64,000 nucleotides of DNA from Octopus sinensis (Eukaryota): assembly GCF_006345805.1 (NCBI RefSeq), contig NC_043002.1, positions 34,472,001 through 34,536,000 of the forward strand. The letters run 5' to 3'. Below the pieces are notes generated by a model that ran no database searches, had not been told where the DNA came from, and worked only from the letters and a program-made list of their open reading frames with translations. The position numbers were made by a program, and so were the translations under genes. This document shows positions 35,615 to 62,527 of this stretch, piece after piece; the first letter of the stretch is position 1, and every line of letters starts with the position of its first letter.

Positions 35615-35706
35615 GCCCGCATAGCTCAGTCGGTAGAGCATCAGACTTTTATGTAGTGTCGATTGATGAAATCTGAGGGTCGCGGGTTCAAGTCCCTCTG
35701 CGGGCG
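35615..35706 (+). tRNA. tRNA-Lys(UUU) with 19-nt intron (35652-35670), isolated copy 1, structurally intact
   Basis: GCCCGCATAGCTCAGTCGGTAGAGCATCAGACTTTTA-[TGTAGTGTCGATTGATGAA]-ATCTGAGGGTCGCGGGTTCAAGTCCCTCTGCGGGCG; 7-bp acceptor stem, A and B boxes, anticodon TTT, T6 terminator at 35713-35718. Confidence 0.93.
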
Positions 35707-36303
35707 ATAAAGTTTTTTATTGCAATTCCTTTTTTTCTTTTTTCGTAGTCGAACAAATTTTCACCTTGATAATGTTACAATTGTCATTCAAAATTCTTTT
35801 GCGTCGTTATATTTCCATTGTGATTCAGTCTATTGGTGTATCAGTCCCACCATACAATGTCACGTCATCATCAAATCAGAAAACGTAATTATCATTGCTA
35901 CATGTAAATTAAATGATTGTCCCGCCCTCTGAAGCAGCTCTGTATCGCATACTGCTATTTCCATCGACAGAGAAACATTTATTTACGGTGTGCTAGATTT
36001 ATCTCGATCACATAAGAATTGCACAAACTCTGTCTTACTTTCATTTTATTTCCAAAAGTGTCATAATTTCGTTGCACCACTGTGATATCATTAACGGAGT
36101 CCTTCTGAAGCTGATTAAAATTTAGGTAATAGAAACATATTTCTGATCTTAACTCTATTTATCTGTTCTATACCTGTTGATTAGCCTTAACACCTTGATA
36201 TTGGTTATTAGTTGCTTCCAGCTTCCATTATTATCTTCATTTTCAACTTTGTATATATACATTCATACATACATATGTGTATGTGTGTGTATGTATGTAT
36301 AAG

Positions 36304-36472
36304 CGCAGGCGTGGTTGTTGAGTAAGATGCTTGCTTGCCAACCAAATTGTTTCGTATTCAGTCCCACTGCGTGGCACCTGGAGGCAAATGTCTTCCACTA
36401 TAACCTCAGGCGGGCCATAGCCTTGTGAACCTTGAGTGGATTTGGTAGACGGAAACCGAAAGAAGCTCGTCG

Positions 36473-36533
<61 letters not shown>

Positions 36534-36801
36534 GTATGTATGTATGTATGTATGTATGCATGCATGCATGTATGTATGCATGTATGTATACTTGTGAGTG
36601 TCTTTGTGTTTGTGATTGTCCCCTACCACTGCTTGACAACCGGTGTTGGTGTGTTTAAGTTCCCGTATCTAGCGGTTCAGCAGAAGTGACCGATATGATA
36701 GGTACCAGGCTTTAAGAAACAGTCCTGGCGTCGATTCATTCGACCAAAACCCTTCAAGGCGGTGCTCCAGCATGGCCACAGTCAAATGACAGAAACAAGT
36801 A

Positions 36802-36805
<4 letters not shown>
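36304..36805 (+). mobile_element. Bipartite SINE, near full length
   Basis: GCGCAGGCGTGG...CAGTCCCACTGCGTGGCACC head, (TA)n/(TATG)n centre, tail ending GAAACAAGTAAAAG. Confidence 0.85.
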
Positions 36806-36833
<28 letters not shown>

Positions 36834-36838
<5 letters not shown>

Positions 36839-39417
36839 GCGACTACAGGTCATCCGCGTCACTCGGGCTCATCACAGATTTTGCATAAGACACATGTATA
36901 AAAGAAAGAAAGAAGCATAAAGCACACCGCAGAGTTATATGTACACTGATAATTTAACAATAAGACCGAAATATAGTTTTGATATAAAAATTACTCACTT
37001 CATTTATATATGAACTCCAGTCGTCTTGGTTTGATGGCGAACTCGTGTCATGCAGCTCCTTCTTGTTGCCCACGTCGTTCAAAATGCTTTTCTCGATAGA
37101 AATCCGAGCCAAACTTAACGTCTAGTAATTTTTTTAAATGCATCCTCTTGAATGCCAGAACATCTCTCTCGTAAGGACATCAGAACGATATCAATTATTT
37201 CAAAATAGGTAATTTTGTAATTAATTTGTGCACCTCTGACTCATTTTCTAAGAGATGGATCAGACTCATCTGCCTGTTCAATGACAGCAGCTGTATTGCG
37301 CAGAATGTTTTCATAATGTTCGTCCATACGATAACCTTCAGCACAATGAATGGAGTCGCTTAGTTTACTCTGACCATGCTTTATATCGAGTAGCTTACAC
37401 TGCAGGATATCAAAGATTTTTCCAGCCTGAGAAAGTATGTTATGAAAGCAACTGATGAAAAACACGAATGTGAAATCATTCAACTTCGCCAAATGATTGT
37501 CTGTTTGACAAAGTGTATTTTCATCCCACTTTTCACTAGAGCATAGAATACTTGTGAAGACATTTTTCGAGTTTTCATGCAATAGTTTTATGGAGGACTC
37601 AGTTCTTGATCTATAGCACCATCTTGTCTCGCACAGTGATGGAATACTGACATTAAGCTGCCTGAAAACGTTTTTCCGCTTAGTACTGGAAGATGTAAAT
37701 TTACTAAATGCGCGTAAATGAGAAAAAAAACATATTTATTCCACTCACCTTCTCGGCACTTTTACTCAAGACTAAGTTAAGCTTATGCGCATATCAGTGA
37801 ATGAAGTGCGCGTGTTTAAATCCTTTATCCTTTAGCTAGCTCTGTATTCCGTTTAGCGTTCCTGTCATTACAGCTGCCCCGTCGTAAGTCTGACTCACTA
37901 ATTTATCGGTAGCATGACTGAAGGAGTTCAACGCAGTTGCGATCACATCAGCCAGTCTTGTGGCACTTTTATCAACACTGACTTCATAGGATCCAAGAAA
38001 TCGTTCACATGTTTTGTCTTCATATGCATATCTTATTATGATCGATAGTTGGACATGCATTGCAGAGTCTGTAGTTTCGTCGGCTTGTACAGACATGAAC
38101 GGAGCTTTATCAACTTCGCTTCTAATTTCATCAGAGATGACATTTCCAATCGCTTGTATTGGGTCATTTTGTATTGTGCTTGAGACTCCTGAGAACTGTT
38201 TCGACTCCTCTTTAGTAGAAAGTCAAGAAGCAAACACGTTGTCGACTTCAACAAAACACTGAAATCGTTCACGGTAACTTCCTCTATTAAGGCTGTCACT
38301 TCCTTTGTCATGTCTACATAACGGCAACTCTTATTTACACAGGTATAACATTGCATTTGTTAACTGCTTTAAATAATGTCTATTTTCTTCATGCCGTTCT
38401 TTTTCCAGTTTGGCAGACTCACTAATTGCTGTCACAATATCGTACAGTCCGAAAGTTTTCAAGCTTTTTTAACTACTTAAATGATTCACTGATATACTGT
38501 GGTGCTTACAGTCACTCAGGATGTTTTGATAATTATCCTAACTTTCACCTGTCCATGACTGATTAGCTTTTGGTTGAAACAACAAGCATAGCCAGCAGTA
38601 GAGTTTCTCCGTGACGCTACTTGCACAAAGCCAATCAATCTGTTCATACCATTTTATCTGAAATGTTCAAGTTCCAACTTTGGTTTTCGATGAAGGATTC
38701 GGCCTGCCTGCTCAAAGAATTTCACGTTTTCTGCAATATTTCTAGCGTCAAATGGTTTATTTTTTATATCTAGCACTATGTCTTTCTCTATTTCTAAGTT
38801 AAGGTTAAAAATAAGACAACCCTGCAAAACACACAGACGCCCAGAATAACAGCAATCAAATAATGACAGCGGAGTGCACAACAAACATCAGCGATCTGAC
38901 TGTTGCCAGTACTCTTGACAAGGGATTCCAGTTAGTCTTCTAAACCTACCAGGCTCGTTCGTAAAAGCCCGAGTTGCTGGATAATTTATCGTTCCTTTCA
39001 GAATATTGTAGAACGGAAACTTTTCGTAAATTGGAATCTAAATCCTAATCTCCATAGAAATTTATTGTTTCAAGAAAACATTGAATTTGAATTACTTTTA
39101 ACTTTTACGATTATAGATAACAACTCGGGCTGTAACTTCTGAGCCCGAGTCGGGCGCATGTGAAAGATGTCGAGAAAACGTCTGCTACGAATTTTTTGAC
39201 ACCGAGCACCTCTAAGACGACCGCTAGACGCTGAACAAAATATAAATGAACTACGACCCGGCTCAATAAAAGGAGCCCGAGTTGTTGGCTGCAATTACTT
39301 GCATATAGTCAGTGTTGGGAAAAATTAAATCAGTTTGCAAATATGCGTTCACTTAATGCTTTGTTAAATTTATACTCGGGCTAAGCCCGAACAGCCTGAG
39401 TGCCGGAGTCGCCACTG
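36834..39417 (-). mobile_element. hAT-superfamily transposon (DUF4371/ZMYM1-like transposase, degenerate) with both TIRs
   Basis: Ends CAGAGGCGACTAC / GGAGTCGCCACTG; 8-bp flanks ATATATAT vs ACATATAT; ORF 37836-38096 SVQADETTDS...QLSIIIRY...ERFLG...SQTYDGAAVM is hAT catalytic-like. Confidence 0.85.
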
Positions 39418-39426
39418 ACATATATA

Positions 39427-40990
39427 CAGTGGGGGAAATAAATATTCATACATGTCAAAATTATTTATTTATTTAATTTCTAATGAACATAAATGGGATA
39501 TACCAATACTATATTTGCATACACATGCATAAACTAAGAATATGCAAAAGAAACTAATAAATTATAGTAGCTAAGGAATTTATATACAATTATAAATATT
39601 TAGCGGTGAAAAAAGTATTCGTAAAGAACATAAATAACTGATACTATTGATTTAATACTTCGTAGCATAACTATTATTCAGTTCCACTTCAACCTATCTC
39701 TTCTTGTAGTTCTTAATCAATGACTCACATGTTTCTTAAGGAATTTTTTCCCATTCTTCTTGACAAATTTTCTTCAAATCTGCAATGCACGTTGGGGCTC
39801 TTGAATGAATTTTAATTTTCAAATAACGCCACAAATTTTCAATGGGGTTCAAGTCAGGTGACTGGTTTGGCCATTCTAATAATTTTATATTGTAATCGAC
39901 AATCCATTTTTGGTAGACTTCGCCGCATGCTTAGGCTGTTGTAAAACCCACACTTCACAAATCTGGAGTTTTTCTACAGAGTTCCATAAATTATTGTTCA
40001 AAATATTTTGGTACATCTCTGCAGTCATTCTACCATCTATCACATGTAAATTGCCAGGACCATTTTCAGAGAAACACCCCCACACCATGATGTTGCCACC
40101 TCCAAACTTTACGGTAGGAATTGTGTTTCTCGACGAATAGGCAGTACCATCTTTCCTCTAAACATGGCTACGCAAATTTCGTCCAAACAATTCAATTTTC
40201 GACTCGTCTGTCTATAGAACATTTTCCCAGAATGTATCAGATTTATCTTTATGTTCATAAACAAATTTTAAACGGGCATCTCTATGCCTTTTAGTCAACA
40301 GCGGAGTTTTTCTAGGAGAGTGTGACTTCAGTTCATTCCTATGAAGTTCATTGCTGATTGTTCGTAGTGTAACACTAGTCCCTGAAGCTAACAAATCTTC
40401 TAGCAACTCCTTTCTGGTGATCATAGCATTTTATTTCGATTCTTCGATTCATTTTTCTTAAAGCTCTAGGGGAAATCTTGCATGGTGCACTGGATCTTAT
40501 TCAGTACCTGATTTTTTATATCCTTGAATAAATGAACATATGGAAGAAAATGGAATACAAAGGGTCTCTGGTATTTTCCTGTAACTTTTACCTGCTTTCC
40601 AGTGTTCAATAATTAAGTTTTTCACTTAGTTTGTAAGTTCTTTATTTTTTACCATTATTACGATACTACTTTATGTTGTCTCAGTGTTGAATGAAGAAGC
40701 TAGCGTTTTGACACTTAGAAATGACAACTGGAACAACTGAAAAAGTTCAAGTAAAAAAAATATTATTTTAACAGAATTTTGTGGCATAGAAAATCGTAAA
40801 TTTATTCTGTATGAATACTTTTTTCACCCCTAAATATTTATAATTGTATATAAATTCCTTAGTTACTATAATTTATTAGTTTCTTTTGCACGTGTATGCA
40901 AATATAGTATTGGTATATCCCATTTATGTTCATTAGAAATTAAATAAATAAATAATTTTGACATGTACGAATATTTATTTCCCCCCACTG
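39427..40990 (-). mobile_element. Tc1-family DNA transposon with ~200-bp TIRs and TA target duplication; transposase disrupted
   Basis: TA|CAGTGGGGGAAATAAATATTC ... GAATATTTATTCCCCCCACTG|TA; minus-strand fragments SPRKTPLL, DESKIELFG, MVWGCFS and WPNQSPDLNPIENLW (Tc1 DDE motifs). Confidence 0.93.
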
Positions 40991-42519
40991 TATATATATA
41001 TAAACAATTGCAGTCTGGAGGATATTTGTAAGCCATTCAAGAACACACAAAAACCATTAGTTTCACTTCAACACTTAATTTTCATTTGCGTCAACATATT
41101 TTCGTCGCTTTGAAACCGCGACCCGTTCACTGACAAAACTTGGTGCTGCAATTGTTTTTGTTTCAGTGCGCGATCTTAGATCAAGTCACTTTTGTACAGG
41201 TGTCAAGACATTATGGCCATTTCAAGCGGCTCCATTTAATTTATCAAAGAAAACATTACGTCAATTTGAAAGAAACCGCTCTCTTCAGAAGCAGATGACC
41301 ATATAGATTTAATACATAGAGGATAAACCATTTTTAACAAATTTACATCAATAATAGAAACTTTGTTTCGTTATGTTATATCTGTGACAGAGTGAGTGAC
41401 TCATATATATCATATATATACATATGATTGATTGATTCTAGTTTCAGCTTATGAGCTGTGGCCATGCTGGGGCACCGCCATATACATATATATATATACA
41501 TATATATATATTTACTAGTTTTATTTTGTCTTTTTGTCTTCTCTCCTTGTGCTGTATGGGCATTTAATGTGGTTTTAGAGTCATATCATGGCTGCTATTT
41601 TCAGCATAGAGGTATCTCTTAGATACCCTAAATTATAATTTTAATAATAATTATTACCTTTGAAGGTTTTTATTTCCATGCTGGCTACTTGATAAGATCG
41701 TTATTTAATTTAAATTAGCGATCTTGTACTTTTATATATGTATATATATTTTCATTTCTAACCCCACATTCTGTCATTTTCTTTTCTTTTCTTTTACCTC
41801 CACTTCACCCCATGTCATGAAAGAGATAAATATGAAGCCCCATTAGTTATATATAAATTTAAAATATCTATGTTTCATTCATTTCGTGATTCAAGTCTAT
41901 AAAGAACAGATTCTTGCTATCTAGGTTAATTCACATTAGATAGCCACATGTAGAAAACTTTGTCTATACTGTCTATTCACTCCTTTCTGTACACCTGTAT
42001 ATCTGATATCCTTTTTAGACAAGTTTAAAATAAGTGTAGAATGTATAATTAAAGTTCATATTAGCTATCCCCTACAGTTTCTATTAAATGTGTATCTGAT
42101 TTTCATTCTTCACAAAAAATAGCCACATACAACAACGTTTCATTTTAAGATACCAATATGAACAACCAGTATTTAAATATAGTAATCCCTAGCTTTCTAT
42201 ACATCATCATCATCTTAGTTACAAATTAAATATCTCTGTTCCAATTTAATCTACATTATAAAGATTTTTCACAGCCTTCAAGCGTATTTATATCACAACG
42301 ACTGCCTACAAAATATTGATGGATTTGCTCTGAAATATGCGACAGTACGAAATGTTTCTTTAGGATATGAATTATGAGAGTTGAATGAATTAAGACGTGA
42401 TGCATCAGAAGTGAACGAATATTTTAGATATAAAGTAATGAGTGAAATAAAATATTAATTATCACTATATGGTAAAGTAAGATATCAAATATCAAAGACA
42501 TGTCCACTTTATGCACTTT

Positions 42520-42945
42520 ATAAAAAGAGTATCACCGAGGCCTTTTTCCGGTGACTCGTTAAAAGGAAGACTGGGCATGCCGTGGTTAATGATGCGCAGA
42601 CACGGGCTGAGACTGCGACATCTCCGGCTCTACGTAGACGATGGTGAACAGGTGTGGTCGCCGTTTGTGAGGCACGCTTTCCTGCAGCTCGTCTCCATGA
42701 CCGAACTACAGTCGTGGATCAAAAAGAGGCCGAGGAAGGGCGAATGGCACCGCGAGTGTCGCGTTGCTCTCAAGCAACTATGCCGTCCCGGGTCGACCTT
42801 GAGCGACTTCAACACAACCAAAGCATTCTATAGGAGATTAGTGGAGGGGAGGTACGACAACGATCTCGAGGCGAACCTGGGTGTCGACGAGGAATACCTG
42901 ACTCGCCTGTTCAAGACGACTTTCGGGCCGAAACCTGCAGCGAAA
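42520..42945 (+). mobile_element. GC-rich L1/Tx1-like ORF2 fragment
   Basis: Abrupt GC-rich island in the 5' half of ORF 42511-43356 (GLGMPWL...QVWSPFVRHAF...KAFYRRLVE); the 3' half of that ORF is unrelated AT-rich read-through. Confidence 0.6.
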
Positions 42946-43976
42946 TTAGACCCAATTGTTTCAACAATTTTTCCGTTCAAAAATTCTTCGCCCGACGGCA
43001 TGGTCAAAACTTTATCAGAAGGCATTTTAAAATTGGTTTCCTCATATAGTTTTTTCTTTGGGGTTGGAGAGAAGCCCTTGCACAAGAGAATAAATAATTC
43101 CCCTCCTCAAGAGGGGAATAACGTTCAAAATTCTGCTAAACACGATAAAACAAGGTGTTTTGTTTTAAAAAAACACACAACAAATGAAACAACAGCAAAT
43201 TCAACAATTAAATTAACAATTACCAGCAACTTACAGTATAATACATCAACAGAACGGAGAAATAGCGAATACATTTATTCTAACCACAAGGGGGCAGTAC
43301 AAATGATTCTGGGTATCGAATGTTGTTACACAAAAGTGTATCTAAAAATGTTATGATAATATAAAACGAATGAAGGGACAGACATATCACAACACAGTGG
43401 GGGAACTGTTCCGACTCTGCAAGACACGTTCCACCACTGAACCTTTTGTTTTAACTTTTCCTGGATAGCACTCACGTAGGACCATTCATTCCCAACATGC
43501 AATCCACTTGCATCCACCTTTTACCGAATCTGTCCGATGACAGACACTTCTTTTCTAACCTTATCTTCCCTCGTAGAAGGAAGACAAAAAAGTTGGTCAA
43601 TCCTTGGTCAGAAATGAAAGTGCCTTTCATACGTGCCTGCTCAATCAATAATGTGTTTATTTTAATTTGTTTCTAAATGAAAGTAGAGCTGTGTTGATGG
43701 CGTAGATAATGTACAATCAGTTGTTCTTATTCCATATTTCCCGCAACGATGAACGGCAAAGTCGACTTTGTTTCTATTTATACTCAGAAAAAGTGCTTAT
43801 CCTATTTTCCCTGTTTACACACAAACACACACACACACACACACACACTTACGTACATGAATAATTGGAAATCCTGCTAGGTATATGGATCCAATCGTCC
43901 TTGTAAAGACACACACAAGAAAAGCGTTTTTGAATAATAAAAAAAAAAAAACGTAAATAAACAAGCGTGCACACAC

Positions 43977-44049
43977 TTCTGAAACTCGAAAGCGAACCAG
44001 AGACCTTTAGATCTGCAGTCTAACGCTCTCCCAACTGAGATATCTCGGC
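43977..44049 (-). pseudogene. tRNA-Phe-derived pseudogene with GCA (Cys) anticodon
   Basis: Minus strand GCCGAGATATCTCAGTTGGGAGAGCGTTAGACTGCAGATCTAAAGGTCTCTGGTTCGCTTTCGAGTTTCAGAA resembles the canonical metazoan tRNA-Phe(GAA) body with GAA>GCA and stem-breaking changes. Confidence 0.8.
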
Positions 44050-44659
44050 TGGAGTCAATATAATCGACTTAACTCACCCCATCCCGAAATTGCTGGCCTT
44101 GTGTCAATATTTGAAATCGTTATTACAGTGAATGGTGATTGGTTGATTAGCCATTGTTTGTCGTTGTTTAATAAGTGCTTTGCAACAGTGTCTGACTGTC
44201 TCCGTTGCTGTTAGAAATAGCAACCAAATCTCCCTTAAATAAAACTACACCGTCTGAAATAAAGAAAAGACACATTAGATAATGCTGTTGTACTTAACCT
44301 TAAATCAACAAGATGGTCCCGGAAGGAGAGGTCAGCTCCATCAAAGCTGGTTTCTGGCTACCCAACAATTCTACTGCCGGCATAATCATTTCAATTGATT
44401 AATTTATTAAAGAATGAACATATATTATTACAGCCATTCTCTCTCTTCCTCTTCTTTCTGTCTTTCTTTTTGTCTGTCTCTTTCGCTTCCTCTCTCTCTT
44501 TTATATATTTTTCTCTCTCTAGTTTCACCTCAGAGCTGCGGCCATGCTGATGCATCGCCGTTTAATATATATATATATACATACACATACATGTGTGTTT
44601 GTGTTTGACGAACTGTACAGCTTCCATCCAACAAAGTTTAATCACAGTGTATCGCAGTG

Positions 44660-45950: not shown

Positions 45951-46130
45951 AAGATCCCTGTTCTATTCCTGATATCTCCTGATATCTTCCTGATATCTAT
46001 TGCTGAAATCTTTATATATATAAAACTGAGAATGTGTGTCTGTCTGTCTGTTTCCCTAAAACATGAGAACTACACAACCAATTTCGTTCAAATTTTACAC
46101 ATGCCTTACTTAGGGCCCAAGGAGTGTCAT

Positions 46131-46351: not shown

Positions 46352-46364
46352 AATTAAAACAGGC

Positions 46365-47160: not shown

Positions 47161-47214
47161 GCATTTAAAGAAGTCGTTAGTGCCCTGAATCATTATGTTA
47201 CCGTGTATCAAATA

Positions 47215-50270: not shown

Positions 50271-50313
50271 AACATCATTAGGTGAGACAAGCTGACTGAA
50301 TCAGCTTCGCTGA

Positions 50314-50525: not shown

Positions 50526-50544
50526 CTGGAGCCTATGCGGCAGG

Positions 50545-50579: not shown

Positions 50580-50659
50580 ACCGGCTGACACTCGCTGTCA
50601 CTTGTTCATTTATTCATCGATGCTCAGAAACTGTTTATTGTGAGTTGCTTAGTTTTTGA

Positions 50660-53367: not shown

Positions 53368-53459
53368 GCCCGCATAGCTCAGTCGGTAGAGCATCAGACT
53401 TTTAAGAACTGTAGTGTTATGAAATCTGAGGGTCGCGGGTTCAAGTCCCTCTGTGGGCG
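53368..53459 (+). tRNA. tRNA-Lys(UUU) with 19-nt intron (53405-53423), copy 2
   Basis: Same body as copy 1 except C68T (G5-U68 wobble); intron AGAACTGTAGTGTTATGAA; T6 run just downstream. Confidence 0.9.
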
Positions 53460-53948
53460 ACAAATTTTTTCATGCAATACCATTTTTTTTTTTTTTCTTT
53501 TTCTTAGTCAAACACATTTTCACCTTGCTGCTGTTACAGTTCTCATTCAAAATTTTTCTTTTTTGCTCAATCTTTTCTTGCTGCCCATCACGTTTTCCAG
53601 CTTGGCAATGTCATTCCGGTCATTCGAGATATTTTTACGCTCTTCTATTTCCATTAGCATTCAGTCTTTTGCTCTTTTATTCCTACCGCGCTATGTCATC
53701 ATCTTCGGCCACAGTCTAATGACTGAAATAAGTAAAATTCAATCATTGTATCAAGTAAATTAACTGACTGGCAATTCTGTGAAGCATGGATACAGATCTC
53801 TGACTAAAGTTTTCATCTACAAAGAAACGTATATTTACATCGTACTAGATCAATTTCAGCCATCTAAAATCACACACAATAGCTCCTCTTAAATTTTCAT
53901 GTATTTTCCCCTGGCGTCAAACAAATACACTTCATTGTTGTTCTTATA

Positions 53949-53986
<38 letters not shown>

Positions 53987-54212
53987 TGAGTGTGTGTGTG
54001 TGTGTGTGCGCGTGCGTGCGTGCGCGTGTGTGTGTGTGTGTGTATGTAGTAGTAGTCCACTGTAGTCCACTCATCTGCAATGAGTATTTCTTAAATGGAC
54101 TGGCATCTCATTGAGGAGCATTTGCAGTAATACGGTCACCTACACGCCATAGAGACGAGGTAACCGCCCTTTGAATCCTAGAACTCTCGACAGCAATGTT
54201 CGAGTGGTGATA

Positions 54213-54247
<35 letters not shown>

Positions 54248-54654
54248 AGAGGTGGTAGTGGTGGTGGTGGAGGAGGAGGAAATATTGCGTGATGCAACTG
54301 AAATAACTGATGGCTATATTATACCAGCTGCGTACTGGGGTCGATCTTTTCGACTCGCGCCGTCCACAAAAATGTCGGGCCTTGTGCCTAGAGTAGAAAA
54401 GATTATAATTGAAAGTGAGTAGTGTATATACATTTTGAATGACCAATATGACTTTACCAGGATGGGACTTGATGAGTGAACGAATTGCTATATTAAATAC
54501 CAGTAGTTAATGTGAAGGAATTATTAGTAATCACTACGGTGTGACATAAGATATCAGATGACAGCTCTATACAACAATCGTTTTAGTTAACAAGGAATGT
54601 CTAGCTAAGTCCATAATATTTCATTTGTCTAAAAGTTAAACTGACTTAACGGAA

Positions 54655-54746
54655 GCCCGCATAGCTCAGTCGGTAGAGCATCAGACTTTTAAGAACTGTC
54701 GTGTTATGAAATCTGAGGGTCGCGGGTTCAAGTCCCTCTGCGGGCG
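54655..54746 (+). tRNA. tRNA-Lys(UUU) with 19-nt intron (54692-54710), copy 3, intact
   Basis: Exons identical to copy 1; intron AGAACTGTCGTGTTATGAA; T runs downstream. Confidence 0.92.
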
Positions 54747-55856
54747 ACATATTATTTTCTTGCAATACCATTTTTTTTTTCTCGTAGTCGAATACATTTT
54801 CACCCTGCTACTGTTACAATTGTTTTTCCCTTTTGGCTCAATCTTTTCTGGCTGCCCATCACATTTTCCAGCTTGGCAATGTCATTCTGGTCTTTCGAAA
54901 TATTTTTACTCTCTTCTATTTCCATTAGCATTCAGTCTTTTGCTCTTTTATTCCTACCACGCTGTCATCATCTTCGGCCACAGTCTAATGACTGAAACAA
55001 GTAAAATTTAAACATTCTCACAAGTAAATTATCTGGCTGCCCTGGCAATTCTGTGAAGCATGGGTATAGATCTCTGACTACAGTTTTCATCTACAAACTA
55101 ACATATATTTACATCGTACTAGATCCATTTCAGCCATCTAAAATGACACACAGTAGCTCCTCTTAAATTGTCATGTATTTTCATATATCAAACTTCGTTG
55201 CACCACTGGTAACACATTAAGAACAAGACCACTGATTATTACATTTTAAGATATTATGATATTAGTGCCAGAAAACAAGATATAGGATCTTTACCTTTTG
55301 ACCTACAGATTTAAAAAAAATTTTTTCTAACTAAACACTTTCAAACTTCGGACACTGGTAGAATGTGTCATATAAAACATGTTTTACTCTTAGCATTTTT
55401 GAGAAAAACTTATATTTACGAAGAATTTTGATAATTTCAAGCAATCGATGACGTGTATTCAGATAAATAAAATGACTGCTGTTGTTTATCAACAAGAAAT
55501 TCCGGTGGTGTATATTTCGTTTGTCACTGCTATTTATGACAACCCTAACTCAAAACCCCAAACCCTACCTTAAAACCTTAACGCTAACCCTAACCCTAAC
55601 GCTAAAACCCTAGTTGTCGACGATACACCACAGACAATGCTTTTATGAGTTTCATAAAATGCGTTGTCGAGTTATATCTAAGGAATGCCAATATATGATA
55701 TGTAGGATTATAACGATCTGAGATTGTGTAATGGAACTGTAGCCATTGCCAGTAGTATTGTATGTATGTATGAATGTTTGTATGTATGTACATATGTATA
55801 TTGTAGCTAAGTTCAAAAGATTTAATCTATCTAAATTTTCGTTGATGTACTTGTCA

Positions 55857-55948
55857 GCCCGCATAGCTCAGTCGGTAGAGCATCAGACTTTTAAGAACTG
55901 TCAAGTGATGAAATCTGAGGGTCGCGGGTTCAAGTCCCTCTGCGGGCG
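55857..55948 (+). tRNA. tRNA-Lys(UUU) with 19-nt intron (55894-55912), copy 4, intact
   Basis: Exons identical to copy 1; intron AGAACTGTCAAGTGATGAA; T4 about 10 nt downstream. Confidence 0.92.
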
Positions 55949-56145
55949 ACGATTTCTCTTTTGGAAATTGTCCCTGAAGAAATACCTAATTCACTGGTTT
56001 CAAATGTGATCATTTACATTTCTTTAATTGAATTGATTTGGTGTGGAAACAGCTGCAAGTAGGAATTTCTCTGCAGGAATCCGAATTTCTTTGAATAAAT
56101 AACTTCTGTACTTCATTTTTTTCTCTCTTCTTTTTGACATATTTA

Positions 56146-56220
<75 letters not shown>

Positions 56221-56223
56221 TTG

Positions 56224-56278
<55 letters not shown>

Positions 56279-56787
56279 ATATATATGTATGTAAAGTATA
56301 TGTATACATATATACGCATTGACACACGCAACATACATACACAAAGATAACTGCGCCCTCATACATACATACATCATATACATGCACACTCTTTGGTCAC
56401 ATACACTAACACACACACACACACGTTATATACGCACAAACTCACGCACGTCAGAGTTACTCACCCCTATTCACACACACTTGCTCACTCACACACACCA
56501 TTCTCGCATAAACACACACGCACGCGCCCCTTCTCTTCTTGCCATCACTAGCACTTTATTATCATTAAACCTCTTTCTTAATTATTATCTCGCTTCCTTT
56601 CAACCTCTTTTTTTCTCCAATAAATCGCCATGTTGGACCGCTGAAATCTACAAGATTTTTTTCATTGTTTTTCTTTCTCTGTTTATTTTCTCTTATCCCT
56701 TTCTATTGAAGAGCGTAGGCGCGAAACGTAAAGCACATTTTCATTTTCCCCAGCGTCAAACAAATACACTTCCTTGTTGTTCTTATA

Positions 56788-56821
<34 letters not shown>

Positions 56822-57024
56822 TGTGTGTGTGTGCGTGCGTGCGTGTGTGTGTGTATGTAGTAGTAGTCCACTGTTGTCCACTCATCTGCAATGAGTATTT
56901 CTGCAATGGACTGGCATCTCATTGAGGAGCATTTGCAGTAATACGGTCACCTACACGCCATAGAGACGAGGTAACTGCCCCCTTGAATCCTAGAACTCTC
57001 GACAGCAATGTTCGAGTGGTGATA

Positions 57025-57056
<32 letters not shown>

Positions 57057-57467
57057 GATAGAGGTGGTAGTGGTGGTGTTGGATGGCGGGGGAGATATTG
57101 CGTGATGCAACTGAAATAACTGATGGCTATATTATACCAGCTGCGTACTGGGGTCGATCTTTTCGACTCGCGCCGTCCACAAAAATGTCGGGCCTTGTGC
57201 CTAGAGTAGAAAAGATTATAATTGAAAGTGAGTAGTGTATATACATTTTGAATGACCAATATTACTTTATCAGGATGGGACTTGATGAGTGAACGAATTA
57301 CTACATTAAATATCAGTAGTAAATGTGAAGGAATTATTAGTAATCACTACGGGGTGACATAAGATATCAGATGACAGCTTTATACAACAATCGTTTCAGT
57401 TAACAAGGAATGTCTAGCTAAGTCCATAATATTTCATTTGTCTAAAAGTTTAACCGGACGAACGGAA

Positions 57468-57559
57468 GCCCGCATAGCTCAGTCGGTAGAGCATCAGACT
57501 TTTAAGAACTGTCGAGTAATGAAATCTGAGGGTCGCGGGTTTAAGTCCCGCTGCGGGCG
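57468..57559 (+). tRNA. tRNA-Lys(UUU) with intron, copy 5, B-box variant (C56T; T64G)
   Basis: T loop TTTAAGT instead of TTCAAGT; T stem GCGGG/CCCGC fully paired; intron AGAACTGTCGAGTAATGAA. Confidence 0.75.
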
Positions 57560-58377
57560 ACATATTATTTTCTTGCAATGCCATTTTTTTTTCTCGTAGT
57601 CGAATACATTTTCACTCTGCTACTGTTACAATTGTTTTCCCTTTTGGCTCTATCTTTTCTTGCTGCCCATCACATTTTCCAGTTTGGCAATGTCATTCCG
57701 GTCTTTCGATATATTGTTACGCTCTTCTATTTCCATTAGCATTCAGTTTTTTGCTGTTTTATTCCTACCGCGCTATGTCATCATATTTGGCCACAGTCTA
57801 ATGACTGAAACAAGTAAAATTTAATCATTGTCACAAGTAAATTAACTGACGGCCCTGGCAATTCTGTGAAGCATGGATAGAGATCTCTGACTACAGTTTT
57901 CATCTACAAACAAACGTATATTTACATCGTACTAGATCCATTTCAGCTATCTAAAATCACACACAATAGCTCCTCTTAAATTTTCATGTATTTTCATATA
58001 TCAAACTTCGTTGCACCACTGGTAACACATTAAGAACAAGACCACTGATTATTACATTTTAAGATATTATGATATTAGTGCCAGAAAACAAGATATAGGA
58101 TCTTTACCTTTTGACCTACAGATTTAAAAAATAATTTTTTCTAACTAAACACTTTCAAACTTCGGACACTGGTAGAATGTGTCATATAAAACATGTTTTA
58201 CTCTTAGTATTTTTGAGAAAAACTTATATTTGCGAAGATATTTCACCTTAAAGTTCTCGTGTTTCGATAATTTCAACCAATCGATAACGTGTATTCAGCT
58301 GAATAAAATTACTGCTGTTATTTGTCAGCAAGAACTTCCGGTGGTGTATATTTCGTTTGTCACTGCTATTTATGACA

Positions 58378-58465
58378 GCCCTCACCCTAAAACCCGAACC
58401 CTAACCCTAAAACCTTAACCCTAACCCTAAAACCTTAACCCAAAAACCCTAACCCTAAAACCCTA
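58378..58465. repeat. Degenerate (TAACCC)n telomere-like tract (paralog at ~55551-55613)
   Basis: AACCCTAACCCTAAAACCTTAACCCTAACCCTAAAA... Confidence 0.8.
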
Positions 58466-58721
58466 TATGGCGACGAAACGCCACAGACATTCTTTTAATG
58501 AATTTCGTAAAATGCGTTGTCGAGTTATATCGAAAGAATGCCAATATGTGTTATGTAGGATTATAACGATCTGAGATTGTGCAATGGAACTGTAACCATT
58601 ACATGTAGTATTGTATGTATGTATGTATGTATGTATGTATGTTTCCATGTATGTACGTATGTTTATACTAGCTAAGTTCAAAAGATTTAATCTATCTAAA
58701 TTTTCGTTGGTGTAATTGTCT

Positions 58722-58813
58722 GCCCGCATAGCTCAGTCGTTAGAGCATCAGACTTTTAAGAAGTGTCAAGTGATGAAATCTGAGGGCCGCGGGTTCAAGT
58801 CCCTCTGCGGGCG
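58722..58813 (+). tRNA. tRNA-Lys(UUU) with intron, copy 6, A-box variant (G19T; T47C)
   Basis: D loop AGTCGTTA instead of AGTCGGTA; intron AGAAGTGTCAAGTGATGAA; no T4 until 58889. Confidence 0.72.
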
Positions 58814-59032
58814 ACGATTTCTTTCTTTCGAAAATGTCCCTGAAGAAATACCTAATTGACTGGTTTCAAATGTGATAATTTAAATTTCTTTTATTGTATT
58901 GATTTGGTGTGGAAACAGCTGCAAGCAGGAATTTCTCTGCAGGAATTCGAATTTCTTTGAATAGATAACTTCTGTACTTCTTTTTTCTTCCATCTTCTTT
59001 TTGTCATATATATATATATATATATGTATGTG

Positions 59033-59090
<58 letters not shown>

Positions 59091-59354
59091 AAGAATAGTC
59101 AATATACATTAGCGTGAGCATACAGAGTGACCCCATAAAGACACAGCCAATTGTTAATATATGGGCATTCCTTCGATATGACTCGACGACATCGGGCATT
59201 TCCGAATTCAAAGAAATTCGAATTCATGCGAAGAAATTCCTGCTTGCAGCTGTTTCCACATCCAATCAATTGAATTATAGAAATTTGAATTCCCATATTT
59301 GAAACCAGTCAATTGGTTATTTCTTCTGGGACAATTTCTAAACAGAAAACTCGT

Positions 59355-59395
59355 CGCCCGCAGAGGGACTTAAACCCGCGACCCTCAGATTTCAT
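59355..59395 (-). pseudogene. Inverted 3' half of tRNA-Lys(UUU) gene (exon 2 plus last 5 nt of intron)
   Basis: Reverse complement reads ATGAA-ATCTGAGGGTCGCGGGTTTAAGTCCCTCTGCGGGCG; no 5' exon upstream on the minus strand. Confidence 0.9.
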
Positions 59396-59409
59396 CTGAG
59401 TATTGTTTG

Positions 59410-59650
59410 TGTATGTATGTATGTATGTATGTATGTATGTATGTATGTATGTATGTATGTATGTATGTATGTATGTATGTATGTATGTATGTATGTATGT
59501 ATGTATGTATGTATGTATGTATGTATGTATGTATGTATGTATGTGTGCATGTATGTATGTATGTATGTATGCATGCATGCATGCATGCATGCATGTATGT
59601 ATGTATGTATGTATGTATGTATGTATGTACGTATGTATGTACGTATGTAT
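59410..59650. repeat. (TATG)n microsatellite between the inverted half-tRNA and copy 7
   Basis: Direct reading. Confidence 0.97.
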
Positions 59651-59707
59651 CTAGTAGCTAAGTTCAAAAGATTTAATCTATCTAAATTTTCCATGACTCG
59701 TATGTCA

Positions 59708-59799
59708 GCCCGCAGAGCTCAGTCGGTAGAGCATCAGACTTTTAAGAACTGCCGTGTTATGAAATCTGAGGGTCGCGGGTTCAAGTCCCTCTGCGGCCG
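59708..59799 (+). pseudogene. tRNA-Lys(UUU) with intron, copy 7, probably defective (T8G, G71C)
   Basis: GCCCGCAGAGC start (U8 lost); acceptor 3' strand TGCGGCC breaks C2:G71; intron AGAACTGCCGTGTTATGAA. Confidence 0.75.
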
Positions 59800-60593
59800 A
59801 CAAATTTTCTTTTGGAAATTGTTGCAGAAGAAATGACCAATTGACTGGTTGGTTTTATATTTGCTGGATGGTTTTATATTTACAGATATGTATTGGTATG
59901 TTTATATGTACAGATAATTACTAGCATGTTACATGTTTTTATGAATCAAATATCATATAAAAGCGCTTTCGTCCACCCTGTGGAGTTTTCAAATTGAACT
60001 TTTGCAGGAATTTTGTCTCCTTATATAGTATTATTGAGTGTGTAGGGGCGGGGAGAGATATAAGATACTACAAGAGGGTGAAGAATGGGGAGAAAGTGAG
60101 TGAGAGAGAGAGAGATCGTGTGTGGTTTTGTATCTTAAAGAAGTGTTAAAGAAAAAGAGAAGGAAAGAAAGAAGAAGGAGAGAAAGAAGAAAAAATTGCT
60201 GATATCTTTGCAGCTGGTCAGTCTTTCAATGGTAAGTGATTCTTAGTTTTTAGAAATGGCAAACCCAGCTGGTCACTCCAAGCGGAGCAAAATGTCACTT
60301 TTAAAGAAATTGTCTGGATTTCTTTCATATTATTGTCTTGTGAGAGAGAGAGAGAGAGAGAGAGAGCGTGTGTTTTGGTGTCTGTGTATCTGAAAGGAAG
60401 TGTCAAATGGGAAAGGGGAATGAAAGGAAGGAGGAGGAGGAGGGAAACAAGAAAAGAAAATGTGTTTACAATTTTGCAACTGGTGAGTCTTTCAATCCAA
60501 TGTTTGATACCTGTGCTGATATGGGATGGAGAATCTGGATGAAAGAGTGTTTTTATTTATGTATATGTACATATGTGTAGTACTGTTTGTGTG

Positions 60594-60650
<57 letters not shown>

Positions 60651-60729
60651 AATACAATTTACTTTACAAAAGTGGTCCTTCATCTAGTACAAAATATTAG
60701 AGAAATATTTTCAGCCATTTAATTTGCTG

Positions 60730-60969
60730 GGGAACTTTGTTATGAAGTATTTTTCCATATTTCTCCTGAAGGAGGTGTCATTCTTTGGACATTTGTAGAA
60801 GGGAAAGATCTTAAATTTTCCTTCTCCACATGTTTCTAGGTGTTTCGCTGAGTAAATACCCAGATACATGTGGAGAAGGAAAATTTAAGATCTTTTCCTT
60901 CTACAAATGTCCAAAGAATGACACCTCTTTCAGGAGAAATATGGAAAAATACTTCATAACATAGTTCTC
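60730..60969. repeat. ~240-bp imperfect palindrome (foldback), copy A
   Basis: ~100-bp arms GAACTTTGTTATGAAG...CCACATGT / ACATGTGG...CTTCATAACATAGTTC around a partly self-complementary 32-nt core. Confidence 0.92.
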
Positions 60970-61395
60970 GTGTCCCAACTGAAACAGATGAGGGCTATAT
61001 TATACCTGTTTCTTTATTACCCACAAGGGGCTAAACATAGGCATAGGTACAGTGCTATATTATACAACCTGCGCACTGGGGTCGATCTATTCGACTGGCC
61101 CCCTCCACAAAAATGCCGGGCCTTGTGCCTAGGGTAGAAAAGATTATAATTGAAAGAGAGTAGTGTATATACATTTTGAATGACCAATTTGACTTTACCA
61201 GGATGGGACTTGATGAGTGAACGAATTACTACATTAAATATCAGCAGTAAATGTGAAGGAATTATTAGTAATCACTACGAGGTGACGTAAGATACCAGAT
61301 GACGGCTTTATACAACAATCGTTTCAGTTAACAAGGAATGTGTAGCTAAGTCCATAATATTTCAATCGTCTAAAAGTTAAACTGGGCGGCCGGAA

Positions 61396-61487
61396 GCCCG
61401 CATAGCTCAGTCGGTAGAGCATCAGACTTTTAAGAACTGTCGAGTTATGAAATCTGAGGGTCGCGGTTTTAAGTCCCTCTGCGGGCG
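61396..61487 (+). pseudogene. tRNA-Lys(UUU) with intron, copy 8, probably defective (G53T, C56T)
   Basis: B box reads GCGGTTTTAAGT; intron AGAACTGTCGAGTTATGAA. Confidence 0.75.
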
Positions 61488-62348
61488 ACATATTATTTTC
61501 TTGCAATACCATTTCTTTTTTCTCGTGGTCGAATACATTTTCACCCTGTAACTCTAACATTTGTTTTCCCTTTTTGCTCATTCCTTTCTTGCTGCCCATC
61601 ACATTTTCCAGCTTGGCAATGTCCTTCCGGTCTTTCGAAATATTTTTACGCTCTTCTATTTCCATTAGCAGTCAGTCTTTTGCTGTTTTATTCCTACCAC
61701 GATATGTCATCATCTTCGGCCACAGTCTAATGACTGAAATAAGTAAAATTTAATCATTGTCACAAGTAAATTAACTGACGGTCCTGGTAATTCTATGAAG
61801 CATTGTTATAGATCTCTGACTACAGTTTTCATCTATCAAGAAGCATACAATTACATGGTACTAGATCCATTTCAGCCATCAAAAATCACACACAATGGCT
61901 CCTCTTAAATTATCATGTATTTTCATATATTAAACTTCGTTGCACCACTGCTGCGCATTAAGAACAACACTATTGATTATTTAAGATATTATGATATTAG
62001 TGCCAGAAAACAAGATATATAGAGAGATAGATATCCTTTGGTAAAGAATGAAAATCACACTCACACATTTAATAGAAACCTGTAAAGAATAGTCAATATA
62101 CATTAGCGTGAGCATGCAGAGTGACCCCATGAAGACACAGCCAATTGTTAAAATATGGGCATTCCCTCGATATAACTCGACGACGTTGGGCATTTCCGAA
62201 TTCAAAGAAATTCGAATTGATGCAGAGAAATTCCTGCTTGCAGCTGTTTCCACATCCAATCAATTGAATTATAGAAATTTAAATTCCCATACTTGAAACC
62301 AGTCAATTGGTAATTTCTTCTGGGACAATTTCCAAAAAGAAAACTCGT

Positions 62349-62388
62349 TGCCCGCAGAGAGACTTAAAACCGCGACCCTCAGATTTCA
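62349..62388 (-). pseudogene. Second inverted 3' half of tRNA-Lys(UUU) gene
   Basis: Reverse complement TGAA-ATCTGAGGGTCGCGGTTTTAAGTCTCTCTGCGGGCA; truncated inside the intron. Confidence 0.88.
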
Positions 62389-62435
62389 AGTTCAAAAGAT
62401 TTAATCTATTTAAATCATCATTGAATCGCATGTCA

Positions 62436-62527
62436 GCCCGCATAGCTCAGTCGGTAGAGCATCAGACTTTTAAGAACTGCCGTGTTATGAAATCTGAGGG
62501 TCGCGAGTTCAAGTCCCTCTGCGCGCG
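62436..62527 (+). pseudogene. tRNA-Lys(UUU) with intron, copy 9, probably defective (G52A, G70C)
   Basis: T stem GCGAG; acceptor 3' strand TGCGCGC breaks C3:G70; intron AGAACTGCCGTGTTATGAA. Confidence 0.75.

What the first reader, a model, noticed from the sequence alone, without database searches (positions are those of the whole stretch)
35615..62527. Family of intron-containing tRNA-Lys(UUU) genes in an animal genome
Nine full-length genes carry a 19-nt insertion exactly between positions 37 and 38. In human and Drosophila, tRNA introns are mainly in Tyr-GUA, Leu-CAA and Ile-UAU (plus Arg-UCU in human), and Lys-UUU is intronless; intron-bearing Lys-UUU is familiar from budding yeast. The exons show a compensatory acceptor pair (C6:G67) and four copies look intact, so these appear to be real genes. 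If they are the main Lys-UUU source, AAA decoding would depend on TSEN/RtcB splicing, a lineage-specific intron gain or retention. I cannot verify whether this is already catalogued.
Basis: partly seen in the sequence, partly recalled or inferred. Interest (0 to 1): 0.82.

Follow-up and report, generated by a model that had tools for sequence, protein, structure and literature searches.

The report
Intron-bearing lysine tRNA genes in octopus
An octopus chromosome segment carries a cluster of nine lysine-tRNA (anticodon UUU) genes, each interrupted by a standard 19-base tRNA intron; about four look functional, and the same kind of intron-bearing gene proves common in environmental eukaryote DNA, so this is a modest extension of known biology, not a lineage-specific oddity.

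Summary
Nine 92-nt tRNA genes lie on the + strand, one at 35615 and eight in a 9-kb array at 53368-62527. Each has a 19-nt insert exactly between positions 37 and 38, and splicing it out gives a tRNA-Lys(UUU). The window matches Octopus vulgaris chromosome OX597819.1 at 98-99%. The genes have A and B boxes, a shared TATA-like upstream block, oligo-T terminators and an invariant G at intron position -3 that can pair with C32, the pair the splicing endonuclease needs. Exons diverge 3.3% between copies and introns 17%. Four copies look intact. Five carry changes at invariant positions and are probably decaying. The T-stem C50/U64 mismatch is normal for this family. All have G at -3, and the spliced exons show strong compensatory covariation. 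The intron is therefore widespread, not an octopus-specific gain. Not tested: expression, splicing, and whether octopus also has intronless Lys-UUU genes. No paper in the held library describes this. Verdict: a new member of a known kind, of modest interest.

The parts
35615..35706 (+). tRNA-Lys(UUU) gene, dispersed copy. Consensus exons, looks intact. Intron at 35652-35670 (TGTAGTGTCGATTGATGAA). T6 terminator 7 nt downstream.
   Evidence: Rfam 59.0 bits; sequence. The identical copy, intron included, is present in Octopus vulgaris OX597819.1.
53368..53459 (+). tRNA-Lys(UUU) gene, first of the array. Its only exon change is C68U (G5.U68 wobble), so it looks intact. Intron at 53405-53423. T6 terminator.
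   Evidence: Rfam 57 bits; differences from consensus.
54655..54746 (+). tRNA-Lys(UUU) gene with consensus exons, looks intact. Intron at 54692-54710. T4 terminator.
   Evidence: Rfam 59 bits.
55857..55948 (+). tRNA-Lys(UUU) gene with consensus exons, looks intact. Intron at 55894-55912. T4 terminator.
   Evidence: Rfam 59 bits.
57468..57559 (+). tRNA-Lys(UUU) gene copy with C56U (B box, G19:C56 tertiary pair) and U64G (restores C50:G64). Probably impaired in transcription or folding. Intron at 57505-57523.
   Evidence: Rfam 63.8 bits. C56 is conserved in at least 90% of 42 distinct relatives.
58722..58813 (+). tRNA-Lys(UUU) gene copy with G19U and U47C and no run of four T within 25 nt downstream. 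Probably decaying. Intron at 58759-58777.
   Evidence: G19 is invariant in 42 relatives.
59708..59799 (+). tRNA-Lys(UUU) gene copy with U8G and G71C (breaks C2:G71). Probably a pseudogene. Intron at 59745-59763.
   Evidence: Rfam 47.1 bits. U8 and G71 are invariant in relatives.
61396..61487 (+). tRNA-Lys(UUU) gene copy with G53U and C56U. Probably a pseudogene. Its intron (61433-61451) equals the consensus.
   Evidence: Rfam 49.4 bits.
62436..62527 (+). tRNA-Lys(UUU) gene copy with G52A and G70C (breaks C3:G70). Probably a pseudogene. Intron at 62473-62491.
   Evidence: Rfam 47.1 bits.
54603..54635 (+). Example of the conserved upstream block (positions -52 to -20 from the gene start): TAGCTAAGTyCAwwAkATTTmATyTrTCTAAAw. 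It is AT-rich and TATA-like and stands in front of all nine genes. Inferred to be an upstream Pol III promoter element.
   Evidence: Alignment of flanks. The motif occurs in the window only in front of these genes: six matches with up to 3 mismatches against 0 expected. Pairwise divergence is 24% here and 57% at -19 to -1.
59355..59395 (-). Inverted fragment holding the last 5 nt of the intron plus the 3' exon.
   Evidence: BLAST with the gene, positions 52-92, 97.6% identity. Because it includes intron bases, it is a DNA-level rearrangement and not a retrocopy of spliced tRNA.
62350..62388 (-). Second inverted 3'-half fragment, abutting the upstream block of gene 62436.
   Evidence: BLAST, positions 53-91, 92.3% identity.
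53903..59087 (+). Two tandem units of about 2.84 kb (53903-56220 and 56743-59087, 90.6% identical), each carrying two of the genes.
   Evidence: Self-BLAST.
59087..63770 (+). Second pair of duplicated segments (59087-61005 and 62081-63770, 88-94% identical). Each carries one gene and one inverted fragment. A further copy of the 54313-55284 segment lies at 61054-62019.
   Evidence: Self-BLAST.

Best explanation
This is a cluster of nuclear tRNA-Lys(UUU) genes in an octopus genome (Octopus vulgaris or a very close sibling). There is one dispersed gene and an eight-gene head-to-tail array built by tandem segmental duplication. Each gene carries a canonical 19-nt tRNA intron between positions 37 and 38.

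Inferred mechanism: RNA polymerase III transcribes each gene from the internal A box (TAGCTCAGTCGG) and B box (GGTTCAAGTCC), helped by a conserved AT-rich, TATA-like block at -52 to -20, and stops at the oligo-T run downstream. After end processing, the tRNA splicing endonuclease (TSEN) measures from the mature domain. It uses the pair between C32 and the invariant G at intron position -3 (the anticodon-intron pair) to cut at both splice sites. The RTCB ligase then joins the halves into a 73-nt tRNA that reads AAA (and AAG).

Four copies (35615, 53368, 54655, 55857) look functional. Five have acquired changes at invariant positions and are decaying, which is the usual birth-and-death turnover of tRNA gene clusters.

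The intron is not an octopus invention: the same arrangement is widespread in environmental eukaryotes.

Shown here: the sequence anatomy, the conservation pattern, the organism and the existence of many relatives. Inferred: transcription, splicing, ligation and use in translation.
For: Gene identity and intron position: Rfam tRNA model, 47-64 bits, one insertion after A37; 19 nt in all nine copies.

Organism: a hAT fragment in the window is 81-93% identical to Octopus vulgaris proteins. O. vulgaris GCA_951406725.2 OX597819.1:97,599,904-97,620,759 is collinear with window 29541-47752, with the main blocks 98-99% identical, and carries gene 35615 unchanged.

Constraint: pairwise divergence among the nine copies is 3.3% in exons, 17.1% in the intron, 23.7% in the upstream block and 57% at -19 to -1. 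Exon versus intron gives Fisher p = 9e-7. The duplicated flanks are only 88-94% identical.

Promoter and terminator: the upstream block occurs only in front of the genes. Eight of nine genes have a run of at least four T within 25 nt downstream.

Splicing signal: intron -3 is G in all 9 window copies and in 106 of 106 unique relatives, while -2 and -1 vary freely. The proximal anticodon-intron pair is the one intron feature reported as conserved and critical for excision in eukaryotes (PMC10485636).

Cloverleaf: across 42 distinct spliced sequences, 98.5% of cells are paired, with 85 double-sided changes; 0 of 500 shuffles reach this. The C50.U64 mismatch lies within the family's range: 9 of 42 sequences are unpaired at 50:64, and an identical GCGGG/CCCTC arm occurs in four unrelated contigs and in an intronless gene.
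Against: No expression or splicing data could be examined.

Thermodynamic folding does not favour the splicing-competent conformer. With the cloverleaf enforced, the best fold pairs U33-A37 with the intron's 3' end and A38 (-32.4 kcal/mol), which buries the 3' splice site. The conformer with the C32:G(-3) pair scores about -25 kcal/mol.

The central anticodon-intron helix is poor in octopus: intron -4 is U, against A in 81 of 106 relatives.

Every copy except 57468 has a pyrimidine-pyrimidine mismatch in the T stem. Five of the nine copies have changes at invariant positions, so the low exon divergence could partly reflect gene conversion instead of selection.

The identity between the window and the O. 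vulgaris reference over 92 nt is not informative when the background identity is 98%.
Confidence: 0.8

Rival explanations
1. The genes are real and spliced but are a minor source. Octopus would also have intronless tRNA-Lys(UUU) genes elsewhere that supply most of the mature tRNA, so AAA decoding would not depend on splicing.
For: Only 64 kb of a genome of several gigabases was seen. Intronless Lys-UUU genes with the same GCGGG/CCCTC T arm exist in unidentified ENA contigs. One long contig (L041, probably algal or viral) carries both forms.
Against: There is no intronless copy in the window and no intronless junction in the three other octopus loci fetched, L125-L127, of which L125 largely overlaps the window. 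None of the roughly 100 animal-like metagenome loci has the intronless junction, although nine of them, and the MAG contig, hold two or more intron-bearing genes. In well-studied intron-bearing families such as Tyr-GUA, nearly all functional genes carry the intron (PMC12168002).
Confidence: 0.25
2. All nine copies are dead. The 19-nt insert would be a disabling insertion in a pseudogene that was then amplified by segmental duplication.
For: The T stem has a C.U mismatch. Five copies have further defects. The local fold hides the 3' splice site.
Against: The insert sits exactly at 37/38. Its -3 G is invariant here and in 106 relatives with otherwise unrelated introns. Exons diverge five times more slowly than the intron and far more slowly than the flanks. 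A promoter-like upstream block and the terminators are retained. The same T-stem mismatch recurs in many independent lineages.
Confidence: 0.07
3. The units are a tRNA-derived SINE or some other mobile element, not cellular tRNA genes.
For: Cephalopod genomes are rich in tRNA-derived repeats (my own knowledge). One copy is dispersed 18 kb from the array and shares only about 280 bp with it.
Against: Each unit ends in a Pol III terminator right after the tRNA, which a SINE head cannot have. There is no tRNA-unrelated body and no A-rich or simple-repeat tail bounding the shared segment. Homology between gene types is limited to about -57 to +100. The array arose by 2.8-3 kb segmental duplications. 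The inverted fragments include intron bases, so they are DNA rearrangements.
Confidence: 0.03
4. ARAGORN's reading is right: these are suppressor-like (anticodon UUA), Ile(UAU) or Leu(UAA) tRNAs with a non-canonical intron.
For: ARAGORN labels.
Against: The labels differ between near-identical copies. The same program, as run here, gives nonsense anticodons of two or four bases for intron-bearing relatives. The covariance-model alignment places the insert after A37, leaving a standard CUUUUAA loop. Eukaryotic nuclear tRNA introns lie at 37/38 (PMC10485636).
Confidence: 0.02

Closest known systems
Saccharomyces cerevisiae tRNA-Lys(UUU) genes (tK(UUU)), one of the ten intron-bearing yeast tRNA families
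   Same: Same isoacceptor (anticodon UUU). A short intron at the canonical 37/38 position, removed by the tRNA splicing endonuclease. The family is held as multiple gene copies (PMC6582322; PMC12168002).
   Different: The exon sequences are animal-type, not fungal. From my own memory, 68 of 73 positions match human tRNA-Lys3. L008 carries nearly that sequence with a 22-nt intron. The yeast intron is 23 nt (my own knowledge) and this one is 19 nt. In animals the halves are expected to be joined by RTCB direct ligation, not by the fungal Trl1/Tpt1 pathway (PMC12168002). In yeast, removing the intron gives a respiratory-growth defect. Nothing is known about this in octopus.
Intron-bearing tRNA families of model animals (Tyr-GUA, Ile-UAU, Leu-CAA, and Arg-UCU in human)
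   Same: Canonical 37/38 position, short intron, anticodon-intron pair, Pol III genes that are often clustered. The expected enzymes (TSEN, RTCB) are the same.
   Different: A different isoacceptor. The GtRNAdb survey in PMC12168002 names Tyr, Ile-UAU, Leu-CAA, Arg-UCU and Met-CAU as the intron-rich animal families and lumps everything else as 'other'. That text does not single out Lys-UUU.
Human and Drosophila tRNA-Lys(UUU) (tRNA-Lys3), intronless
   Same: Almost the same mature sequence, D arm, anticodon arm and T loop (my own knowledge of the human sequence; the tool-based comparison is with L008).
   Different: Those genes have no intron. Octopus has C6:G67 in place of G6:C67, and a G49:C65 / C50.U64 T stem in place of C49:G65 / A50:U64.
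Uncultured-eukaryote Lys-UUU genes found here (for example L076, L095, L096 and L101 with the same T arm; L122 and L123 from a TARA sample with the same acceptor stem)
   Same: Intron at 37/38, G at -3, 18-21 nt introns, oligo-T terminators, often tandem copies.
   Different: The source organisms are unknown and the intron sequences are not alignable. Similarity to the octopus introns is no better than for shuffled introns.

Membership tests
Eukaryotic nuclear tRNA gene (Pol III, type 2 promoter) | Sequence fits the tRNA covariance model and folds as a cloverleaf | tested here: met
   RF00005 scores of 47-64 bits against a gathering score of 29 for all nine copies. The spliced consensus folds with the acceptor and D stems and the core of the T stem; in the minimum-energy fold the anticodon arm is drawn as an extended eight-pair helix. 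The cloverleaf is supported by covariation across 42 distinct relatives.
Eukaryotic nuclear tRNA gene (Pol III, type 2 promoter) | Internal A box (positions 8-19) and B box (52-62) close to consensus | tested here: met
   TAGCTCAGTCGG and GGTTCAAGTCC are read directly from the sequence. The comparison with the consensus TRGCNNAGTGG / GGTTCGANNCC rests on my own knowledge. Copies 57468 and 61396 have C56U, 61396 also has G53U, and 62436 has G52A.
Eukaryotic nuclear tRNA gene (Pol III, type 2 promoter) | Oligo-T terminator shortly downstream | tested here: met
   A run of four to six T within 25 nt in 8 of 9 copies; 58722 lacks one.
Eukaryotic nuclear tRNA gene (Pol III, type 2 promoter) | Transcribed by Pol III in vivo | not testable with these tools
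   No expression data are available.
Canonical endonuclease-spliced tRNA intron (eukaryotic type) | Intron lies between positions 37 and 38 | tested here: met
   The covariance-model alignment places the only insertion after A37. The rule is taken from PMC10485636.
Canonical endonuclease-spliced tRNA intron (eukaryotic type) | Proximal anticodon-intron pair (position 32 with intron -3), leaving the 3' splice site in a 3-nt bulge | tested here: met
   C32 and G(-3) are present in 9 of 9 copies. G(-3) is present in 106 of 106 unique relatives, while -1 and -2 vary. Caveat: the minimum-energy fold prefers another pairing.
Canonical endonuclease-spliced tRNA intron (eukaryotic type) | Length within the known range (6-133 nt) | tested here: met
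   19 nt. The range is taken from PMC4090602.
Canonical endonuclease-spliced tRNA intron (eukaryotic type) | Intron is actually excised and the exons ligated | not testable with these tools
   Needs tRNA sequencing, RT-PCR or an in vitro TSEN assay.
tRNA-Lys(UUU) | After intron removal, a 7-nt anticodon loop with U34 U35 U36 | tested here: met
   The loop is CUUUUAA in all nine copies.
tRNA-Lys(UUU) | Charged with lysine and used to read AAA/AAG | not testable with these tools
   Inferred from the anticodon and from near-identity of the mature sequence to animal tRNA-Lys3 (my own knowledge; L008).
tRNA-derived SINE | tRNA-related head without its own terminator, followed by a tRNA-unrelated body and a tail, dispersed as retrocopies | tested here: not met
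   The terminator follows the tRNA directly. Shared homology is limited to about -57 to +100. The copies arose by kb-scale tandem duplication.

The most novel reading that the evidence does not exclude
Every functional tRNA-Lys(UUU) gene in octopus, and in many other marine invertebrates, carries this intron. On that reading it is an ancient intron, shared with fungi, that vertebrates, insects and nematodes lost independently. Reading of the AAA codon in these animals would then depend entirely on the TSEN/RTCB splicing pathway, and the intron may be kept for a reason, as the respiratory-growth defect of intronless yeast tRNA-Lys(UUU) hints.
Probability: 0.4. Interest if true: 0.45.

Novelty: new member of a known kind. 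Interest (0 to 1): 0.3.

Why it matters
The textbook list of intron-bearing animal tRNAs (Tyr, Ile-UAU, Leu-CAA, Arg-UCU) comes from a few model species. This case shows that a cephalopod, and apparently many uncultured marine eukaryotes, also keep an intron in tRNA-Lys(UUU).

If all Lys-UUU genes in these animals have the intron, a very common codon depends on tRNA splicing. That would give a natural system outside yeast for asking what this intron is for.

The finding is also a practical warning. Tools run without intron handling mislabel these genes as suppressor, Ile or Leu tRNAs.

It does not reveal a new mechanism.

Tried and rejected
1. Intron homology across lineages. The octopus introns looked similar to some metagenome introns (for example L025, L104). 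Global alignment scores were no higher than for shuffled introns: the top score of 14 was reached in 61% of shuffles. Intron sequence therefore says nothing about common descent.

2. Translation trick. I searched the protein database with the peptides that the intron-bearing and intronless genes would encode, to look for octopus intronless copies. Octopus six-frame ORFs are evidently not in that database. The search returned mostly intronless Lys-UUU genes of unknown organisms, so it is uninformative for octopus.

3. Identifying the organism from the non-LTR fragment at 49375-50007. The best hits were only 50-57% identical, and the named hits were spread over corals, fishes and sea slugs. An exact look-up found nothing. 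The hAT fragment solved the question.

4. Taxonomic naming of the metagenome loci. Contig names carry no taxonomy. Pfam gave only an animal-type LRRNT/LRR protein on L032 and a GT92 domain on L020. Rfam found only tRNAs. My recollection that the Ga0056xxx and Ga0126xxx samples are gutless-worm metagenomes could not be checked.

5. Literature. Seven full-text searches and several papers turned up no description of Lys-UUU introns in molluscs or other animals. The supplement of the GtRNAdb survey is not held.

6. Thermodynamic support for a bulge-helix-bulge fold was not found.

7. The SINE reading and ARAGORN's anticodon calls were considered and rejected, as set out under the rival explanations.
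Full report
WHAT IS THERE

The Rfam tRNA model finds nine full-length 92-nt matches on the + strand. One is at 35615-35706. The other eight lie between 53368 and 62527, at 53368, 54655, 55857, 57468, 58722, 59708, 61396 and 62436. Scores are 47-64 bits against a gathering score of 29.

The model alignment shows one insertion, directly after ...CAGACUUUUA (A37) and before (A38)UCUGA. The alignment of the nine copies shows that it is 19 nt in every copy. Removing it leaves a 73-nt tRNA with a CUUUUAA anticodon loop, that is tRNA-Lys(UUU).

ARAGORN found seven of the nine and called them Stop(UUA), Ile or Leu. These labels differ between near-identical copies. The same program gives meaningless two- or four-base anticodons for intron-bearing relatives. 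The labels are artefacts of intron placement.

BLAST with each exon finds no other full copy and no intronless copy in the window. It finds only two inverted 3'-half fragments, at 59355-59395 and 62350-62388, and these include the last bases of the intron.

WHERE IT COMES FROM

The window is repeat-rich eukaryotic DNA, about 37% G+C and full of microsatellites. I recognised no host protein gene, only transposon debris.

A hAT/DUF4371 fragment at 37839-38222 is 81-93% identical to Octopus vulgaris proteins and 83% identical to an O. bimaculoides protein. The locus of one of these proteins is O. vulgaris GCA_951406725.2, chromosome OX597819.1:97,599,904-97,620,759. It is collinear with window 29541-47752, with the main blocks 98-99% identical, and contains gene 35615 unchanged, intron included. 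The window is therefore O. vulgaris or a very close sibling species.

ARE THESE GENES?

Several independent features say yes.

- Promoter boxes. The A box (TAGCTCAGTCGG) and B box (GGTTCAAGTCC) are standard. The comparison with the consensus is from my own knowledge.
- Terminators. Eight of nine copies have a run of four to six T within 25 nt downstream.
- Upstream block. All nine share an AT-rich, TATA-like block at -52 to -20 (TAGCTAAGTyCAwwAkATTTmATyTrTCTAAAw), while the 19 nt next to the gene are unalignable. The block occurs nowhere else in the window. I infer that it is an upstream Pol III element.
- Divergence pattern. Pairwise divergence among the copies is 3.3% in exons, 17.1% in the intron, 23.7% in the upstream block and 57% at -19 to -1. 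Exon versus intron gives Fisher p = 9e-7. The duplicated segments that carry the genes are only 88-94% identical.
- Conserved intron ends. The intron's last five bases (AUGAA) are invariant. The G at -3 can pair with C32. This proximal anticodon-intron pair is the one intron feature reported as conserved and critical for excision by the eukaryotic endonuclease (PMC10485636).

INTACT AND DECAYING COPIES

Copies 35615, 54655 and 55857 have identical exons. Copy 53368 differs only by C68U, which gives G5.U68.

The other five carry changes at positions that are invariant or nearly so in 42 distinct relatives:

- 57468: C56U, plus U64G
- 58722: G19U and U47C, and no terminator
- 59708: U8G and G71C
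- 61396: G53U and C56U
- 62436: G52A and G70C

These are probably dying copies.

The array was built by tandem segmental duplication. There are two units of about 2.84 kb (53903-56220 and 56743-59087, 90.6% identical) with two genes each, a second duplicated pair (59087-61005 and 62081-63770), and a further copy of one segment. This is ordinary birth-and-death evolution of a tRNA gene cluster.

THE T-STEM MISMATCH

Eight copies have C50.U64 in the T stem, which could suggest a pseudogene. Across 42 distinct spliced relatives, however, 50:64 is the one weak pair: 9 of 42 lack a standard pair there, and every other pair is paired in at least 41 of the 42 sequences. The identical GCGGG/CCCTC arm occurs in four unrelated contigs with different acceptor stems and in an intronless gene. 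The mismatch is a family trait, not a defect.

RELATIVES ELSEWHERE

With the loci fetched later, these hold 106 unique gene sequences and 41 distinct mature sequences. The introns are 10-32 nt (mode 19-20), and T4 terminators follow 111 of 125 genes.

Intron -3 is G in 106 of 106 unique genes. Positions -2 and -1 are free, and -4 is A in 81. If the conserved feature were pairing of the anticodon with the last three intron bases, -1 and -2 should be A. They are not. The invariant G is therefore best read as the partner of C32.

The spliced exons fit the cloverleaf with 98.5% of cells paired and 85 double-sided changes. No shuffle out of 500 reaches this.

Many of these genes have animal-type exons. 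L008 has a mature sequence I recall as one base from human tRNA-Lys3, with a 22-nt intron. L032 carries an animal-type LRRNT/LRR protein. L122 and L123 (L123 from a TARA ocean sample) have the octopus acceptor stem and a 21-nt intron. A contig filed under a Rubritalea MAG consists of 1054-bp repeats, each holding three tRNA genes: Glu-CTC, an unidentified 91-nt tRNA with an insert in the anticodon loop, and an intron-bearing Lys-UUU. Others, with a T or A discriminator base, are probably algal or viral.

I could not attach names to the source organisms.

No animal-like locus holds the intronless junction, although nine hold two or more intron-bearing genes.

HOW IT MOST LIKELY WORKS

The following steps are inferred. 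Pol III transcribes each intact gene. The ends are processed. TSEN positions itself on the mature domain, uses C32:G(-3), and cuts after A37 and before A38. RTCB joins the halves. The tRNA then receives CCA and the usual U34 and A37 modifications and reads AAA/AAG.

One caveat applies. In silico, the lowest-energy fold pairs U33-A37 with the intron's 3' end and A38 (-32.4 kcal/mol). The conformer with the anticodon-intron pair scores about -25 kcal/mol. Local structure alone therefore does not present the 3' site in a bulge. Eukaryotic enzymes are known to rely on the mature domain and to tolerate weak local structure (PMC4090602; PMC10485636).

COMPARISON WITH WHAT IS KNOWN

Mechanistically this is a canonical tRNA intron. 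The closest named case is yeast tRNA-Lys(UUU), one of ten intron-bearing yeast families. Removing its intron causes a respiratory-growth defect (PMC6582322).

In model animals the intron-bearing families are Tyr-GUA, Ile-UAU, Leu-CAA and, in human, Arg-UCU. A GtRNAdb survey of 576 eukaryotes names those families plus Met-CAU and lumps the rest as 'other' (PMC12168002).

I found no paper in the held library that describes Lys-UUU introns in molluscs or other animals. Automatic annotation with tRNAscan-SE has very probably already catalogued them (my own inference).

VERDICT

The claim of a lineage-specific feature is not supported, because the intron is widespread. The claim that AAA decoding depends on splicing remains untested, because only 64 kb of the genome was seen. 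This is a new member of a known kind, of modest interest.

Noticed in passing
window 43977-44049 (-): A weak tRNA match (30.9 bits) with a Cys(GCA)-like anticodon arm, a degenerate T arm and an unpaired acceptor stem, with a run of 11 T starting about 27 nt downstream. Probably a tRNA pseudogene or the head of a tRNA-derived repeat. It is unrelated to the Lys genes.
   Followed up: partly
window 58379-58465: An interstitial telomere-like repeat, (CCCTAA)n with variants, inside the tRNA array, about 260 bp upstream of gene 58722.
   Followed up: no
window 37244-38222 (-), 39888-40430 (-), 32237-32593 (-), 24223-24785 (-), 45126-46069 (-), 47292-47762 (-), 49375-50007 (+): Transposon debris: a frameshifted hAT/DUF4371 transposase, Tc1/mariner-like transposase pieces, and several reverse-transcriptase and zf-RVT fragments. 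I recognised no host protein-coding gene in the 64 kb.
   Followed up: partly
L061 (Ga0115006_10004414) 3385-6171: A dense one-strand array of tRNA genes (17 Rfam tRNA matches; ARAGORN lists 16) with two type II hammerhead ribozymes between them (52.7 and 50.1 bits). It includes a Lys-UUU gene with a 17-nt insert at 37/38 and another tRNA with an insert. It looks like a viral tRNA array.
   Followed up: no
L128/L129 (CBDBEG010000035.1, filed as MAG: Rubritalea sp.): A 14.4-kb contig made of 1054-bp tandem repeats. Each repeat holds three eukaryote-type tRNA genes: Glu-CTC, an unidentified 91-nt tRNA with an insert in the anticodon loop, and an intron-bearing Lys-UUU. This is almost certainly eukaryotic contamination of a bacterial genome bin.
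   Followed up: partly
L124 (ena:ERZ27264179:k141_19502) 306-378: An intronless tRNA-Lys(UUU) gene with the same GCGGG/CCCTC T arm (C50.U64 mismatch) as the octopus genes, in an unidentified organism. Many similar intronless copies with conserved flanks appear among short ENA contigs, possibly a high-copy family.
   Followed up: no
window 46133-46351 and 50314-50528: Tandem repeats of 70-77 bp (3 copies, 88-96% matches) and 106 bp (2 copies, 96%) inside the retroelement-rich, G+C-richer stretch at 44-52 kb.
   Followed up: no
window 59355-59395 (-) and 62350-62388 (-): Inverted copies of the intron end plus the 3' exon stand upstream of genes 59708 and 62436. The second replaces the distal part of that gene's upstream block. 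This points to an inversion or template-switch event before the last duplication.
   Followed up: partly
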